From Selaginella moellendorffii (Eukaryota > Plantae > Lycopodiophyta): DNA of 64,000 bases. The translations under genes and the position numbers were made by a program. Of this stretch, positions 24,619-29,900 are shown one piece after another (the stretch's first letter is position 1; each line of letters opens with the position of its first letter). Under the pieces are notes generated by a model. The model saw only the letters and a list, made by a program, of their open reading frames with translations, made no database searches and was not told the DNA's origin. The DNA lies in assembly GCF_000143415.4 (NCBI RefSeq), contig NW_003314262.1, positions 1,353,960-1,417,959 of the forward strand, written 5' to 3'.

Positions 24619-24621
24619 GCG

Positions 24622-25120
24622 ATGGCAAGCACCTCCGTCGACGTGAAAGAACTCCCAGCGTCGTATGTTTTCGTCGCTGATGTTCCTGGAATGAAGAACA
24701 CGGACGTCAAGGTACGCACCTTCTTTCCTTCTTGTTTTCGGGGTTTTTCGTGTTCTACGGCCGCTCGAAGTTCGTTCTTCTCGAGAGTCCTGTCAAGAGA
24801 AGGCAGTGTGTTAATCCAAACGAGAGACGCGTTACCAGGTCCAGATCGAGAACGATAGCATTCTCAAGATCAGTGGAGATCGCAAGCGCGACAATGACAA
24901 CTCTCACTACGACACCAAGTTCGTGCGGGTGGAACGATCCGCAGGGAAGTTCATGCGGAAGTTCAATCTGCCCGCAAACGCAGCTCTCGACTCCGTCTCT
25001 GCCGCATGCCAGGACGGCCTGCTCACTGTAGTAGTGCCAAAGATCCCTCCTCCTGAACCATACAAGCCCAAAACTTACGACATAAACGTCGGAGCGATGC
25101 ACCTGACCAGTCCACCGTGA
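24622..25120 (+). CDS. Small heat-shock protein, class II-like, N-terminally short
   Basis: [37 protein letters not shown] and [16 protein letters not shown]. Intron 24712-24838. Confidence 0.88.
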
Positions 25121-25213
25121 GGCAGAAATTTGTGAAAAAACAAACTTCTTCACCATTTCTTAGTCACAACTGATAACACTCCGTTTTCTCACCATTAAAC
25201 GCAAGCGTTTCAC

Positions 25214-26444
25214 CTATAACTTTGGACAGGAGTTCGCTCTAGCTTTTGCAGTCGGGCCTGAGTAAAAGAGAAAACAACAGTGCTCAATAAGAAATGAAAA
25301 CGAAATAAGAAAAACTCTTACACATTCCGTAATAGCAAGGTTGTCGAGACGCTGAATCTTCTTCTAAAGGCGGCGGAGTCTGGCCGTAGATAAAATCACA
25401 GCTCATGTCTTCGAAGTCTACAAGTTAGAAAAACTTAGCTCCAATCCGTTGGAAGAGAAAAACTTACTGGGAACCATCGTCATGGGCACACCGAGTTCTT
25501 TCGCAAAAAATCTCTGGGATGGGACCTTGCACATGTTGGTACACAAGCCCACGCATGCCGAGCGCTCCAAAACTCTACATGCCAAAAACGAGAAGCAAAA
25601 ATTCTAAATAAAAAACGAAAAAGGAGACAGAACAAACACTATGCCTGCATTTCTGGATGTGAACACCACTTTTTTGCTTCACTCCATCAACCTCCACTTC
25701 GATCACCTGAGTTTAATTTTAGAGACAGACACTAACAACACTACCAACACACCTCGCTTGGTCCAATCAACCAACTCGTGAACAGTGTAGTGCCGTGAGC
25801 ATAAAACTCCGCTGTAGCTCTAGATACCGGCAAGATAGTCCGAACCTATAGTGTCAGGCGCTAAATGTGAACAAGATGTTGACAAACTCGAAAACCTGGA
25901 AGAAACCGCTGCATACCATAGCTCCGATCCACCAAGGCATGAGAGACTCTAATACTCGCAGTACCATTTCGTGCTGTTGCACAGGAGTCCGGCCTTGCAT
26001 CATCTTCCTTGCTACGTCCACAAAGCCATCAAACCCAGGAAGGCTGGTGGTTTTTCCTGCAGCACAGAACAACGACGGAGCTTTAGAAAAAGCTGAGACA
26101 AAACCGATCAAAGTACCAGAGATTTTGGACATGGCTCCAACGAAGACGAGTATCATCCGCTTGTCAAGCCAGGAATCGTTGTAAGAGGAGATCTGTCCCA
26201 TCGGAGCAGGCCTCCATGTTTCTTCAAGCCTTCCAGATGCCGCGGCCCTGCACTTAAGAGTAAAAGCACCACAAGCTCTCGATGTTCTTCCCGACTGTCT
26301 AGAAAGATCCCTCTTGATTTCCAGACTAAACGAACCAACATTCGCGATGGAAGAAGCACCAGCAGCCATGCCGGCTCGCAGGTTCTTCCTCCGCAAAAAT
26401 ATTCCTACGGTGTTTGTCCTTTTCAATCCGGAATCTGATTCCAT
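25214..26444 (-). CDS. D27-like beta-carotene isomerase (DUF4033), multi-exon
   Basis: Motifs YNDSWLD, GFDGFVD, WLIGP, KCRVLERSACVGLCTNMCKVPSQRFF, FEDMSCDFIYGQTPP, ending CPKL*. Start at ATG 26444 or 26369. Confidence 0.88.
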
Positions 26445-26600
26445 GGAGCATACTGGAAGCATGTAAAACAAAACACGAGTGAGAGATAAGTTCGCGAAAA
26501 CAGTGAAAAAACAGAGCCAAAGATTCTACCTTGCAAACTTTGCAAAGAATAAATACTAGATGTAGAAAGCAGTGAAAAAGGAATTTTTTTCATACCTCTA

Positions 26601-26924
26601 TCAAGAATCTATCTCCATGGCTTTGGCAGCCCCCGCTGCCTTCACTAAGCTCTTCTTCTTCTTCTTCTTGCTAACTTTCTTCTTGATCTTCACCGAATCG
26701 ATCTATCGATAGCACAGAGCTGCGTAAATGCGAATAAAATCATGGTATCCATACCTTCATCTTGTTTTGGTTTGGAATTCTCTTGGCCTGCTTGTCAAGC
26801 TGTTCTTTCTCCCCTGCGCCAGCCACAATCAGGTGAGATTTCTATCAGAGAATCACAAATGCCTACTCTTGAGATCAAACTCGTGCTGCCGGGCGCGCGT
26901 GGCGAGGTTGTTCTTCTTCGACAT
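26601..26924 (-). CDS. Small basic Lys-rich protein (72 aa, three exons), resembling a conserved uncharacterised plant family
   Basis: Exons 26924-26867, 26813-26755 and 26702-26601 with GT-AG introns give MSKKNNLATRARQHEFDLKREKEQLDKQAKRIPNQNKMKIDSVKIKKKVSKKKKKKSLVKAAGAAKAMEIDS*. Confidence 0.8.
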
Positions 26925-26989
26925 CGCAAGAACCCTAAGTTTTAGTTTTAGGGTTCTACCTATCTCTCTCTTTTGTCATTGTTTCTGGA
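26925..26989. promoter_or_regulatory. 65-bp divergent intergenic region with telo-box-like motifs
   Basis: AACCCTAA and TTAGGGTT in inverted arrangement between ATG 26924 (-) and ATG 26990 (+). Confidence 0.6.
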
Positions 26990-29900
26990 ATGGAGGAGGG
27001 AGATTTGGCGCTGGAGACCGGCCCCTCTCTGAGGCCAATGTAGGCATCGTTGCGCTCGTCCTGATGGAAAATCCAAGCGTTTTCTTGGTTTTGGCAGATA
27101 CGCGTTTGGATTCGAGGCCATTCCCGGGAAGAACAAGCAAATGGTGTGCATCGACGAGCACACCATCGCCTATGCTCTCGGCTGCAATCTCGTCTTCCAC
27201 AAGTACAATCCTTTCGATTCTTTTGTAGAATTTGTTCTACTTTTTCTTTCTTGATCAGTTTCCTCGACAAGACAATGCATTTCATCGTCATGAACAGTGG
27301 AGTCCAGGTGAGAGAATAGAAAGGATCTCTATTCAGACAAACTCTTTCTTCCTATTCTTTTCTTTTTCAGAGCATCGTTTCTCTGACTTCTACACCGAGT
27401 GGGAGCCTCGTTGCAGTGTGTGAGAAGATGAAAACTGGTCACGGCCAGGTGCATAGATTTTTCCTTATGTGCTTTTATGATCATTGATCTGGGACTGTCA
27501 TGTTCGTCGATTGTAGATTTCGATTGTCGACACAAAGAAGCTCAAAGTTGTGCAAACACTCATCTCCACAAGTCCCGCAGGTGGCTATTAATTTCACTCT
27601 TGGTATGTTGGGACCATTGTGTTGTTGGTTTCTTTGTTATTCTCATCACAGGTGTGATTGTTTTGAAGAGCTTGAAGTGTGCGCTCTATCGAAGAACGAG
27701 CAAAAGGCAGTCGCTGTCACAAAGAACGTGAAAGGTTCTGTAATCTGTTGGGAGCTCGAGCACGGCAAGGTCCGCTTGAAAAAGAATGGAGAATTGATGC
27801 TCACTGCTTACGTTTTTGTTTTTCAATAGGTTTTGACGACTATACCAATTTTTGTGGAGATCACGGGAGTGACTGTGAATCCCCATGATAGCGACGAGTT
27901 TGCCACTTGTGGTTAGTCCTTCTTTCAAGTAAAATAGTTTTCATACGTCTTTTGAGCATGCAGGGCCTACACATTTTAGAATATGGAGCCTCAAAGGTGG
28001 AACTACCAAGAGCTTCGCTGTTCCTGGCCTTCAAGTCACTAATCAGGCGCTTACTCTCACGGACCATGATTGGCTCCAGGATGGCGGGCTTGCTGTTTCG
28101 ACAGTAGAGGATATGATACTGATAGTACGAGACGGACGCATAGAGAGTGTAAGTATTTGATTTCAGATGGACTTGTAGCTTCACAGAGTTTTCGCTGCAG
28201 AAACTGGTAGACACAGGGCACACACTGCGTTTAGTGGCCACTCGGAACGGATTTCTCACGGGAAGGGACGACGGCACTCTGACTGACTTTAAGGTTTAGT
28301 TGTTGTTTCGTTGAAGAATTAATCCGAACTTTCTTTCCTCCACAGGCCCGTGGAAGACCTCCTGTTTATACAGGAACCGTTCTTACTAGGTGCACATCCT
28401 AACATGATTGAGATATTCGTCCTCAGTCTTTAAACTTTACAGAACTCGTGGTCCGATTTCCTGTATTGCGCTACCTCCGAATGTGGATGCCCTGGCTTAT
28501 GTTCAACAGGTAAATGCTTTGGTTTTTCTGGTCATAACTGAAAATTGTGCCACGCTAGATAACAGGAAGGTATTGTGCTCAAGGTTGACTATGCGGACTT
28601 TGAGTCGGAGGGCCCGAAAGATCTCATGGACATGCATGGTAGACTGTAAGAAGAAAGATATTGTTCTACAATCTTTCTTGTTTTGTACAGTGATTGACCT
28701 TGCGGCTGTTTCTGGAATGGATATTTGCGTTCGTCGCAGATTGATTGCAACTTGTAGTAACGATAAAATGGTGCGGGTGTGGAGCTACTGTCGACTTTTG
28801 TGCGACTTAACTTACGCGTAAGCATGTATCCTTGTCTACATGCCATTCACTTCTGTCATTTGCAGTTGTCACGAGCAACCAAGCAGCATAGCCATCAGCC
28901 CCTGGGGCTACGAGCTCGCAGTGGGAATGGCATACTCAAGCATCTTGCTGTTTGGTATCATGGCCTCTCGGTGAGCTTCAGAACGAAAATAACGTGTTAT
29001 CTAATCACCTCTTCCTGCTTTGCTTGTAAAGGCTAGAGCCCCGGAGGGAAGTTGCGCTGCAAGGCTGTGGAGCAATAAAGTACAGTCCAAGTGGTGACAT
29101 GGTTGCGGCTTTATGCGGGCGTGAGATTGTTATCTACTCGAGCTTTACGTGGGAAGTGCTTACAGTATTGAAGGTACTTGCACAGTTCTTGTGCTAATTT
29201 TCTCCCGCGAATTTATTGCAGGGACATATCAATAAGGTGACGTCGATTGCGTGGTCCAGTAACTCTGTTCATCTAGCATCAGCTGGACTGGACGGTGCCA
29301 CCTACAGATGGGCTGTTGACGACTTTAGGCGGCACGAGGAATGCGTCACGAAGGGATCGCAGTATGCCAGTATACTTTACGACCACAGCCGGTATTTCCT
29401 ATACAGCTGCGGTCCGGGCCTTCCGTTGCGAATCATCAGCACCAGTAACAAGCCCCCACCGGAGATTCTCAACACTTTCCCGAACGAAGTTATTATCGGA
29501 GTATGGGATGGCACAGGGGACGGTGACTGGGCAAACAGGGTACAGGGGGCTCCGATTCTTGTGCGAGCTTCAAGACCAACCAAGCTATGGCCAACTTGTC
29601 GGCTATTTCCAGAGGCGAATGGTTTNNNNNNNNNNNNNNNNNNNNNNNNNNNNNNNNNNNNNNNNNNNNNNNNNNNNNNNNNNNNNNNNNNNNNNNNNNN
29701 NNNNNNNNNNNNNNNNNNNNNNNNNATACGCAAGAGCTGCATGGTTACGCTTATCCTTTTGCGAGCAACAAGACTTCTCCTCTTATGAAGTTTCCACAGC
29801 AGTCAGGTATGGTGACTGAATTTTGACGATATAGTTTCCCAGCTCATCTGTGCATTCTTACCAGGTCGGATTGCTGCAATGTGTGTTGACGAAACGCATA

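What the first reader, a model, noticed from the sequence alone, without database searches (positions are those of the whole stretch)
25214..26924. Candidate spliced dicistronic mRNA: hidden 72-aa basic protein upstream of D27-like carotene isomerase
Seen: a three-exon 72-aa gene absent from the ORF track ends TGA-TAG at 26601. Five nt after the stop codon is a donor AG|GTATG (26595), and a pyrimidine-rich CAG acceptor at 26453 lies 8 nt before an in-frame D27-like ATG (26444). The 156-nt gap is almost entirely intron-like, with no evident TATA or telo-box. Inference: both ORFs share one mRNA from the telo-box promoter at ~26930, about 13 nt apart after splicing. This would couple a putative nucleolar-type basic protein to a plastid carotenoid isomerase. 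Dicistronic nuclear mRNAs are known in green algae but only rarely in land plants.
Basis: partly seen in the sequence, partly recalled or inferred. Interest (0 to 1): 0.8.

Follow-up and report, generated by a model that had tools for sequence, protein, structure and literature searches.

The report
Spikemoss D27 mRNA carries hidden ORF
In the spikemoss Selaginella moellendorffii, assembled RNA from three studies shows that an unannotated 72-residue, very basic reading frame and the carotenoid isomerase gene D27 are spliced into one messenger RNA only 13 bases apart, a rare arrangement in land plants; translation of both frames is not yet shown.

Summary
On the minus strand, a three-exon 72-codon ORF (26924-26867, 26813-26755, 26702-26601) ends TGA-TAG. 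Five bases later a GT donor (26595) opens a 143-nt intron, whose AG acceptor (26453) lies 8 nt before the D27 ATG (26444).

Spliced contigs from three studies carry this junction and both small-gene introns. One contig runs from 19 nt upstream of the small ATG into D27 exon 6. None covers the 143-nt stretch.

The organism is Selaginella moellendorffii. The downstream ORF equals RefSeq XP_024537782.1 and sits at the base of the D27-proper clade. NCBI calls no gene for the small ORF on either haplotype.

Best reading: a spliced bicistronic (or long-uORF) mRNA from a telo-box bidirectional promoter. D27 is probably translated by reinitiation, perhaps at the second in-frame AUG (26369).

Not shown: single-molecule continuity, translation of either ORF, and any family for the small protein. 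Its exons hit nothing; the joined 72-aa search was left out by rule. Ten D27/D27-like1 homologue loci from other plants lack the small ORF.

This is a new member of a known kind (CDC26_TTM3; Arabidopsis intergenic-splicing readthrough). Unchecked scan notes report similar pairs elsewhere in this genome.

The parts
26931..26955 (.). Inverted pair of telo-boxes in a 66-nt head-to-head promoter. AACCCTAA lies at 26955-26948 on the minus strand and at 26931-26938 on the plus strand. The pair sits between the small-ORF ATG (26924, minus) and the ATG of a 1303-aa WD40 gene (26990, plus).
   Evidence: Pattern search, sequence and WD40 gene call. The longest RNA contig starts at 26943.
26867..26943 (-). 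Exon 1: at least 19 nt of 5' leader plus small-ORF codons 1-19 and one further base. ATG at 26924, with G at -3 and T at +4.
   Evidence: X2 contig 7 reaches 26943. Joint 26866..26814 is seen in X1 and X2. AUG context.
26755..26813 (-). Exon 2 of the small ORF (59 nt).
   Evidence: Joints 26866..26814 and 26754..26703 in X1 and X2 contigs; GT..AG ends.
26596..26702 (-). Exon 3: the last 33 codons of the small ORF, stops TGA (26603-26601) and TAG (26600-26598), then AG before the donor.
   Evidence: Contig pieces 26596-26702 in X1 and X2; translation.
26453..26595 (-). The 143-nt 'intergenic' GT-AG intron, removed in all three RNA-type runs. It holds no TATA, telo-box or poly(A) signal.
   Evidence: Joint 26452|26596 in X1, X2 and X4, and zero contig depth inside. 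Composition and motif scan. The other haplotype differs at 1 base only.
26117..26452 (-). D27 exon 1. It carries 8 nt of inter-ORF spacer; an out-of-frame AUG at 26451 (41-codon ORF); the annotated D27 AUG at 26444 (T at -3); and a second in-frame AUG at 26369 in a strong context (G at -3, G at +4; peptide starts MAAGASS).
   Evidence: RefSeq CDS start.
25214..26056 (-). D27 exons 2-7: 26056-25917, 25845-25753, 25706-25645, 25574-25468, 25417-25322 and 25257-25214 (stop). Intron 25644..25575 is GC-AG.
   Evidence: Joints. The joined model equals P0175 / XP_024537782.1 exactly. PF13225 hits on exons 5 and 6.

Best explanation
One transcription unit of Selaginella moellendorffii starts at a telo-box bidirectional promoter (TSS at or above 26943, minus strand). 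It yields a ten-exon mRNA carrying two non-overlapping ORFs.

- ORF1 is 72 codons, lysine-rich, with pI 10.5.
- ORF2 is the plastid beta-carotene isomerase D27.

The whole space between them is a 143-nt spliceosomal intron. In the mature mRNA, the ORF1 stop and the annotated D27 AUG are therefore 13 nt apart. The small gene has no 3' UTR or poly(A) signal of its own, and D27 has no upstream promoter space. These points are shown at contig level.

The following steps are inferred.
- Ribosomes load at the cap and mostly translate ORF1, which has the first AUG and a purine at -3.
- D27 is then made by the fraction of ribosomes that reinitiate after the ORF1 stop. The most likely site is the second in-frame AUG at 26369, which lies 88 nt past the stop in a strong context and opens an 'MAAGASS...' transit-peptide-like start.
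- Leaky scanning is a minor route, because four AUGs with a purine at -3 precede the D27 start.
- ORF1 thus throttles D27 output. With six exon junctions downstream of its stop, it would also make the mRNA NMD-sensitive, as reported for CDC26_TTM3.

Whether the 72-aa product works as a protein or ORF1 acts only as a long regulatory uORF remains open. I put it at roughly even odds.
For: -: the joint 26452|26596 (GT..AG on the minus strand) is present in spliced contigs from three studies (X1, X2, X4).
- X2 contig 7 (1095 nt) runs from 26943 through all three small-ORF exons into D27 exon 6. X1 contig 1 runs from 26912 to beyond the D27 stop.
- depth inside 26453-26593 is zero in all three RNA-type runs. 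Only the DNA-type run X17 shows the unspliced form.
- splice sites and reading frames fit.
- the D27 model is identical to RefSeq XP_024537782.1.
- the PF13225 domain is present.
- the gap has no TATA, telo-box or poly(A) signal, and has intron-like composition.
- the second haplotype keeps the ORF, the stops, the donor and the acceptor.
- AUG inventory and contexts.
- homologues align 15-25 residues further in than the annotated N-terminus, which fits a start at Met26.
- PMC11892635: CDC26_TTM3 is a conserved plant bicistron subject to NMD.
Against: - Contigs are assemblies, not molecules. They cannot show caps, poly(A) ends, strand or isoform ratios, and the runs are only guessed to be RNA, though nine spliced junctions argue for cDNA.
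- A D27-only transcript starting inside exon 1 (below 26452) would be invisible in contigs.
- A 72-codon ORF1 and a 13-nt spacer are both unfavourable for reinitiation.
- ORF1 is not AUG-depleted and has no weak Kozak context, so the algal leaky-scanning signature is missing.
- In Arabidopsis intergenic-splicing readthrough RNAs, the second ORF is rarely translated (PMC9768141).
- The small protein's exon pieces match no Pfam or PDB entry.
- The pairing is absent from all ten homologue loci examined.
Confidence: 0.72

Rival explanations
1. Mixed population. The spliced two-ORF RNA is a readthrough by-product stimulated by intergenic splicing, as in the 158 Arabidopsis loci of Kurihara et al. 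2022, and is largely degraded by NMD. Functional D27 would come from a monocistronic mRNA whose TSS lies inside 'exon 1', between 26452 and about 26380, with AUG 26369 as its first start.
For: - PMC9768141 reports intergenic splicing that removes the first gene's terminator. Those RNAs are NMD targets and their second ORFs are rarely translated.
- AUG 26369 has the best context in the region and opens a typical MA... transit-peptide start.
- Contigs cannot reveal a TSS nested inside a longer transcript.
Against: - In Arabidopsis the readthrough RNAs coexist with monocistronic mRNAs of gene 1. Here no contig retains any base of 26453-26593 in three studies, so no separately terminated small-gene mRNA is seen.
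- The stop-to-donor distance of 5 nt leaves no 3' UTR.
- The joined form is the assembled, hence dominant, path through the acceptor in all three runs, with unbranched contigs in X1 and X2.
Confidence: 0.2
2. ORF1 is not a gene product of its own but a long, lineage-specific regulatory uORF in a three-intron 5' leader of D27. Only its translation matters (repression, NMD coupling), not the peptide.
For: - Its exon pieces match no family.
- A third of the sequence is a (AAG)n-type lysine run.
- The two haplotypes differ by 1 synonymous and 2 nonsynonymous changes, which shows no sign of constraint, although the test has no power.
- No counterpart lies upstream of D27/D27-like1 in ten homologue loci from other plants.
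Against: - Three phase-compatible coding exons with canonical introns inside a 5' leader are unusual for a de novo uORF.
- All internal AUGs are in frame.
- Lys codons are 17 AAG to 3 AAA, against 8 to 7 in D27.
- The telo-box promoter suits a translation or nucleolus-type gene (established knowledge of telo-boxes).
- Atlas feature search gives weak leads to an 81-aa streptophyte cluster and to small nucleolar basic families (scores 0.80-0.82, lead only).
- The joined protein was never searched, so the absence of relatives is not established.
Confidence: 0.4
3. Assembly artefact. The de Bruijn contigs chimerically join two separate transcripts, or derive from a processed retrocopy in DNA.
For: - The tool warns that a contig across two genes shows no single transcript, and that the runs are only guessed to be RNA.
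- X1 contig 1 does merge with the convergent HSP20 region.
Against: - The join falls exactly on GT..AG boundaries, 143 nt apart.
- It recurs in three studies with different SNP haplotypes.
- It is flanked by eight other canonical junctions in the same contigs.
- The DNA-type run X17 shows only the unspliced form.
- A retrocopy would itself require the joint mRNA to have existed.
Confidence: 0.03

Closest known systems
CDC26_TTM3 bicistronic transcript of plants (Lorenzo-Orts et al. 2019, Nat Plants 5:184; as summarised in PMC11892635 and PMC11062462)
   Same: A small upstream ORF of about 65-72 codons and a downstream metabolic enzyme ORF sit on one nuclear mRNA. The upstream stop followed by a long downstream region predicts NMD sensitivity. 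The upstream ORF was long missed or listed only as a uORF.
   Different: The gene pair is different. CDC26_TTM3 is conserved from green algae to angiosperms and its peptide belongs to a known family (APC/C subunit). Here the pairing is not found in other D27-clade genes examined, and the peptide has no assigned family. Translation of both ORFs was shown experimentally for CDC26_TTM3 and has not been shown here.
Intergenic-splicing readthrough transcripts of Arabidopsis (Kurihara et al. 2022, PMC9768141)
   Same: An intron whose donor lies just after gene 1 and whose acceptor lies just before gene 2 removes the intergenic region, producing a spliced bicistronic RNA.
   Different: In Arabidopsis these RNAs coexist with monocistronic mRNAs, are minor, NMD-degraded species, and their ORF2 is rarely translated. 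Here gene 1 has no 3' UTR at all (5 nt from stop to donor). No separately terminated form is assembled in three studies, and the joined form is the only assembled path into D27 exon 1.
Exclusively polycistronic loci of green algae (Gallaher et al. 2021, PMC7896298; leaky-scanning study PMC11892635)
   Same: A short 5' leader, a small ORF1, a very short inter-ORF distance (13 nt here; 14 nt in the REX1 example), and no monocistronic forms detected.
   Different: Algal ORF1s have weak Kozak-like contexts and are depleted of AUGs, which supports leaky scanning. Here ORF1 has a purine at -3 and three further AUGs precede D27. Here the short spacer is created by splicing out a 143-nt intron. The organism is a vascular land plant.
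Conserved-peptide uORFs (CPuORFs) of plant mRNAs
   Same: A translated ORF in the leader of a main ORF that is expected to lower main-ORF translation.
   Different: CPuORFs are defined by peptide conservation across orthologous mRNAs, and none was found here in the loci examined. A length of 72 codons spread over three exons is atypical.

Membership tests
Bicistronic nuclear mRNA (CDC26_TTM3 / green-algal type) | Two complete, non-overlapping ORFs on one mature spliced transcript | tested here: met
   X2 contig 7 covers 26943 to about 25305 and X1 contig 1 covers 26912 to below 25214, both across the 26596|26452 junction. This is contig-level evidence; single-molecule proof is lacking.
Bicistronic nuclear mRNA (CDC26_TTM3 / green-algal type) | No separate monocistronic mRNAs (exclusive polycistron) | tested here: inconclusive
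   Contig depth within 26453-26593 is zero in three RNA-type runs. Contigs drop rare forms, however, and cannot show a TSS nested inside exon 1.
Bicistronic nuclear mRNA (CDC26_TTM3 / green-algal type) | Both ORFs translated into proteins | not testable with these tools
   No Ribo-seq or proteomics data are at hand.
Bicistronic nuclear mRNA (CDC26_TTM3 / green-algal type) | Each ORF encodes a protein with relatives of its own | tested here: inconclusive
ORF2 meets this: PF13225 and identity to XP_024537782.1. The ORF1 exon pieces give no Pfam or PDB hit and only weak Atlas leads.
Green-algal leaky-scanning bicistrons | Weak Kozak-like context at ORF1 and depletion of AUGs upstream of ORF2 | tested here: not met
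   The ORF1 AUG has G at -3. AUGs at 26760, 26618 and 26451 all have a purine at -3 and precede the D27 AUG. Criteria are from PMC11892635.
Intergenic-splicing readthrough transcript (Kurihara 2022) | Intron spanning the space between gene 1 and gene 2 | tested here: met
   Intron 26595..26453, running from 5 nt after the ORF1 stops to 8 nt before the D27 AUG.
Intergenic-splicing readthrough transcript (Kurihara 2022) | Coexists with normally terminated mRNA of gene 1; the readthrough form accumulates in NMD mutants | tested here: inconclusive
   No terminated gene-1 form is assembled. NMD dependence is not testable here.
D27 family beta-carotene isomerase | D27-like C-terminal domain (PF13225) | tested here: met
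   Exon 5 scores E = 4e-14 and exon 6 scores E = 1e-3. The domain is also precomputed for the homologues.
D27 family beta-carotene isomerase | Placement in the D27-proper clade rather than D27-like1 or D27-like2 | tested here: met
   In the careful ML tree of 102 proteins, P0175 joins the clade holding Crocus 'D27 isomerase' and the Tarenaya and Raphanus D27 proteins, with support 98/95. The D27-like1-type clade is separate, with support 99/94. The clade labels rest on source names and on motifs recalled from memory.
Conserved-peptide uORF | Peptide conserved upstream of orthologous main ORFs in other species | tested here: not met
   tblastn of the small protein finds nothing upstream of D27-clade loci L003-5, L013 and L014, or of D27-like1 loci L002 and L007-L012. 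No other Selaginella species could be examined.

The most novel reading that the evidence does not exclude
Selaginella moellendorffii may use obligate, splice-compacted bicistronic mRNAs as a regular mode of gene expression. In these, a small 'hidden' ORF1 with no 3' UTR sits upstream of a larger ORF2. This would be a vascular-plant counterpart of green-algal polycistrons, but with a different translation mechanism (reinitiation rather than leaky scanning). The 72-aa ORF-D27 unit would be one verified instance. Unchecked scan notes list 23 'dicistronic' candidates in this genome, and two follow-ups also report spliced RNA through both ORFs.
Probability: 0.3. Interest if true: 0.8.

Novelty: new member of a known kind. 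Interest (0 to 1): 0.55.

Why it matters
Bicistronic nuclear mRNAs are textbook exceptions in land plants. One conserved case (CDC26_TTM3) is well studied, and Arabidopsis readthrough RNAs are mostly NMD fodder.

Here a vascular plant appears to express D27, the first committed enzyme towards strigolactones, only downstream of a 72-codon ORF on the same spliced mRNA. If confirmed, three things follow:
- D27 output in this lycophyte is set translationally.
- A protein-coding gene is missing from the annotation.
- With the other candidates noted in this genome, polycistrony may be far more common in Selaginella than in seed plants, offering a system to study reinitiation after long ORFs and escape from NMD.

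It also gives a practical warning for annotators of compact plant genomes: an 'intergenic' stretch can be an intron.

Tried and rejected
1. Family assignment of the small protein, exon by exon, found nothing usable.
- Pfam at E <= 10 gave no hit.
- PDB phmmer on all three pieces gave no hit.
- The Atlas feature search on exon 3 gave only sub-threshold leads.
- It was used only inside scripts, for local tblastn against fetched loci.

2. Word-index protein searches with the D27 exon-1 ORF and with P0001 residues 100-206 returned only the Selaginella protein itself. The full-length search found no other Selaginella species, so conservation within the genus could not be tested. The Diphasiastrum protein P0002 has no gene position on record.

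3. The 'called gene' directly upstream of the Sphagnum-type D27-like1 cDNA (L002:3-197) looked at first like a second bicistron. It is an ATG-less open frame at the contig end, unrelated to the small protein, so I rejected it.

4. An snoRNA or other RNA family in the 143-nt intron or elsewhere in the locus: Rfam at E <= 1 gave only chance-level hits elsewhere.

5. A fusion protein by alternative splicing or readthrough is excluded. ORF1 and D27 are in different frames after splicing, and two stops end ORF1.

6. Literature searches for the SELMODRAFT and XP accessions, and for D27 together with dicistronic, found nothing.

Full report
**1. What is in the sequence**

Read on the minus strand, the region holds a small ORF that no six-frame ORF list can show, because it is split over three exons.
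- Exons are 26924-26867, 26813-26755 and 26702-26601, separated by GT-AG introns of 53 and 52 nt.
- Joined in a script, they give 72 residues: pI 10.5, 20 lysines, including a run of six.
- The ORF ends with TGA (26603-26601) and then TAG.
- Five bases later comes AG|GTATGA, with the G at 26595. A T-rich stretch (45% T, 34% GC) ends in TTCCAG at 26453.
- Eight bases further on is the ATG at 26444.
- The 156-nt stop-to-ATG gap contains no TATA[AT]A, no telo-box and no AATAAA-like signal.

**2. The downstream gene**

Seven exons from ATG 26444 to the stop at 25214 translate to 289 aa.
- The product is identical to RefSeq XP_024537782.1, 'beta-carotene isomerase D27, chloroplastic [Selaginella moellendorffii]' (P0175).
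- Exons 5 and 6 hit Pfam PF13225, D27-like_C.
- The window corresponds to scaffold GL377566.1.
- The second haplotype (GL377671.1, L001) is about 99% identical here and keeps the ORF, stops, donor and acceptor.
- In a careful ML tree of 102 family members, the protein sits at the base of the clade that contains the Crocus 'D27 isomerase' and the Tarenaya and Raphanus D27 proteins (support 98/95). The D27-like1-type clade is separate (99/94).
- It is therefore probably the D27 orthologue rather than a 'D27-like' paralogue. The clade labels rest on source names and on motifs I recalled from memory.

On both haplotypes the NCBI gene calls list nothing between the divergent WD40 gene and the D27 CDS. 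The small ORF is indeed unannotated there.

**3. RNA evidence**

The run search returned 20 holders with word shares of 0.14-0.59. Shares of roughly 0.3-0.6 are what exon-only sequence would give. I laid four runs on 24900-27200.
- X17 is genomic: its contigs are unspliced and at depth 2.
- X1, X2 and X4 come from three different studies and are cDNA-like. Their contigs skip nine or ten intervals, all with GT..AG ends on the minus strand (one is GC..AG).
- The skipped intervals include both small-gene introns (26866..26814, 26754..26703) and the claimed 143-nt intron (joint 26452|26596, seen in all three runs).
- X2 contig 7 (1095 nt) starts at 26943, 19 nt upstream of the small ATG. It runs through all three small-ORF exons, across the junction, and on to D27 exon 6.
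- X1 contig 1 (1991 nt) runs from 26912 to beyond the D27 stop.
- In the bin 26440-26516, the depth of each RNA-type run equals exactly 13 covered bases (26440-26452). The bin 26517-26593 is empty.
- So no assembled RNA retains any part of the 143 nt: neither a small-gene 3' UTR nor a D27 leader starting upstream of the acceptor.

Caveats:
- These are de Bruijn contigs, not molecules, and the library type is only guessed.
- Contigs drop rare forms.
- A TSS nested inside exon 1 would be invisible.
- X1's contig also merges with the convergent HSP20 region, which shows that contigs can bridge neighbouring genes.

The junction itself falls on canonical splice sites 143 nt apart, in three studies with different SNP haplotypes. 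It can only come from spliced RNA that contains both the end of ORF1 and the start of D27.

**4. Anatomy of the mature leader**

- AUG 26924 (G at -3, T at +4) opens ORF1.
- Two further AUGs (26760, 26618) lie in frame inside ORF1.
- Six nt after the stops, an out-of-frame AUG (26451) opens a 41-codon ORF that overlaps the D27 starts.
- The annotated D27 AUG (26444) has a pyrimidine at -3.
- A second in-frame AUG (26369) has G at -3 and G at +4 and begins 'MAAGASS...'.
- Homologues align 15-25 residues further in than the annotated N-terminus, which weakly favours Met26 as the real start.

The promoter is a 66-nt head-to-head interval between ATG 26924 (minus) and ATG 26990 (plus; a WD40 protein of 1303 aa). 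It contains an inverted pair of telo-boxes.

**5. Mechanism**

Shown at contig level:
- There is one spliced transcript with two ORFs, 13 nt apart.
- Gene 1 has no terminator region.
- Gene 2 has no promoter space upstream.

Inferred:
- ORF1 is translated first.
- D27 is reached mainly by reinitiation, most plausibly at AUG 26369, 88 nt past the stop. The 6- and 13-nt distances to AUGs 26451 and 26444 are too short for a post-termination 40S subunit to reacquire initiator tRNA. This last point is established knowledge of reinitiation and was not tested here.
- The leaky-scanning signature defined for green-algal bicistrons is absent. That signature is a weak ORF1 context plus AUG depletion (PMC11892635).
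- Six exon junctions lie more than 50 nt downstream of the ORF1 stop. The mRNA should therefore be NMD-sensitive unless D27 translation clears them, the interplay described for CDC26_TTM3.

**6. Is ORF1 a protein gene?**

This is unresolved.

For:
- It has three phase-compatible coding exons.
- It starts at the first AUG of the mRNA.
- Its internal AUGs are all in frame.
- Its Lys codons are 17 AAG to 3 AAA, against 8 to 7 in D27.
- It sits behind a telo-box promoter.
- The Atlas feature search gives weak leads to an 81-aa streptophyte cluster and to small nucleolar basic families: RBIS/DUF4665, LLPH and DUF5564. Scores are 0.77-0.82, which are leads only.

Against:
- Its exon pieces match no Pfam or PDB entry.
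- One third of the sequence is low-complexity.
- The haplotype differences (1 synonymous, 2 nonsynonymous) carry no information.

The spliced 72-aa sequence has no reference. The absence of relatives is therefore not established.

**7. Conservation of the pairing**

I fetched cDNA or genomic loci for D27-clade relatives:
- Logan cDNAs L003-L005;
- JGI cDNA L014;
- the Riccia sorocarpa genomic locus L013.

I also fetched loci for D27-like1 relatives:
- the Sphagnum-type cDNA L002;
- Logan cDNAs L007-L012.

Their leaders are 24-747 nt long. They hold no ORF resembling the small protein, and tblastn gives only chance-level matches. An apparent upstream 'gene' in L002 is an ATG-less open frame at the contig end. 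No other Selaginella species was present in the protein collections. The arrangement is therefore not a general feature of D27 genes; whether it is genus-wide is unknown.

**8. Comparison with known systems**

- It works like the CDC26_TTM3 bicistron: a small ORF plus an enzyme on one mRNA, with an NMD link. It is not that locus, and it lacks that locus's deep conservation.
- It shares the defining intron geometry of the Arabidopsis intergenic-splicing readthrough transcripts (PMC9768141). It differs in leaving gene 1 with no 3' UTR, and in showing no monocistronic gene-1 form in three studies.
- It resembles green-algal exclusive polycistrons (PMC7896298) in its compactness. It fails their leaky-scanning criteria.

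I file it as a new member of a known kind.

**9. Wider context**

The scan's own notes, which are unchecked AI notes, list 23 'dicistronic' candidates in this same genome.
- Two follow-ups report spliced RNA assemblies through both ORFs: AtuA-OPR (s1-430251) and COX23-like/WD40 (s1-419792).
- I could not test these.
- They raise the possibility that splice-compacted bicistrons are a habit of this compact genome.
- No paper in the held library links Selaginella nuclear genes to polycistronic expression.

**10. Verdict**

- The core of the interpretation, one spliced mRNA carrying both ORFs, is supported at contig level, with confidence about 0.7.
- Translation of both ORFs, the 'nucleolar' nature of the small protein and any functional coupling remain untested.
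- Interest is moderate to high (0.55): a clean, RNA-backed land-plant bicistron upstream of a strigolactone-pathway enzyme, of a kind already known.

Noticed in passing
window 24619-25257: The HSP20 gene (plus strand, CDS 24619-25120) converges on D27 (stop 25214, minus strand), with only 93 nt between the stop codons, so their 3' ends must overlap. The X1 RNA contig runs through both. X2 contig 4 shows an extra minus-strand GT..AG joint, 25150..25100 (51 nt), inside this overlap.
   Followed up: no
window 25575-25644; L001: D27 intron 4 has a GC-AG donor, confirmed by spliced contigs. The RefSeq model on the other haplotype (XP_024519838.1, 220 aa) reads into this intron and truncates. The model for the window's haplotype (289 aa) is correct.
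   Followed up: partly
window 26924-26990: This is a very tight bidirectional promoter. The ATGs of the small ORF (minus strand) and of a 1303-aa WD40 protein (plus strand) are 66 nt apart, with an inverted telo-box pair (AACCCTAA ... TTAGGGTT) between them.
   Followed up: partly
window 26326-26451 (-): An out-of-frame AUG lies 6 nt after the ORF1 stops and opens a 41-codon ORF that overlaps both candidate D27 start codons. It is a further barrier to scanning ribosomes.
   Followed up: no
other windows of the same genome (scan notes s1-430251, s1-419792, s1-408341 and others): The scan holds 23 notes with 'dicistronic' for S. moellendorffii. Several describe small hidden ORFs (PIG-Y, COX23-like) abutting larger genes, and two follow-ups report spliced RNA through both ORFs. 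This may be a genome-wide habit.
   Followed up: no
L008:1-294 and 748-1467: A Logan cDNA-type contig (SRR31479251) of a D27-like1 homologue carries the tail of another same-strand ORF (97 aa, unrelated to the small protein) 454 nt upstream. It could be readthrough or an unspliced or genomic contig.
   Followed up: no
P0173 (Brassica cretica KAF2570747.1): This D27-like1 model contains an internal tandem repeat of the 'YLENSGCVGMCVNMCKIPTQDFFTNEFGLPLTMNP' segment. It is probably an annotation or assembly artefact.
   Followed up: no
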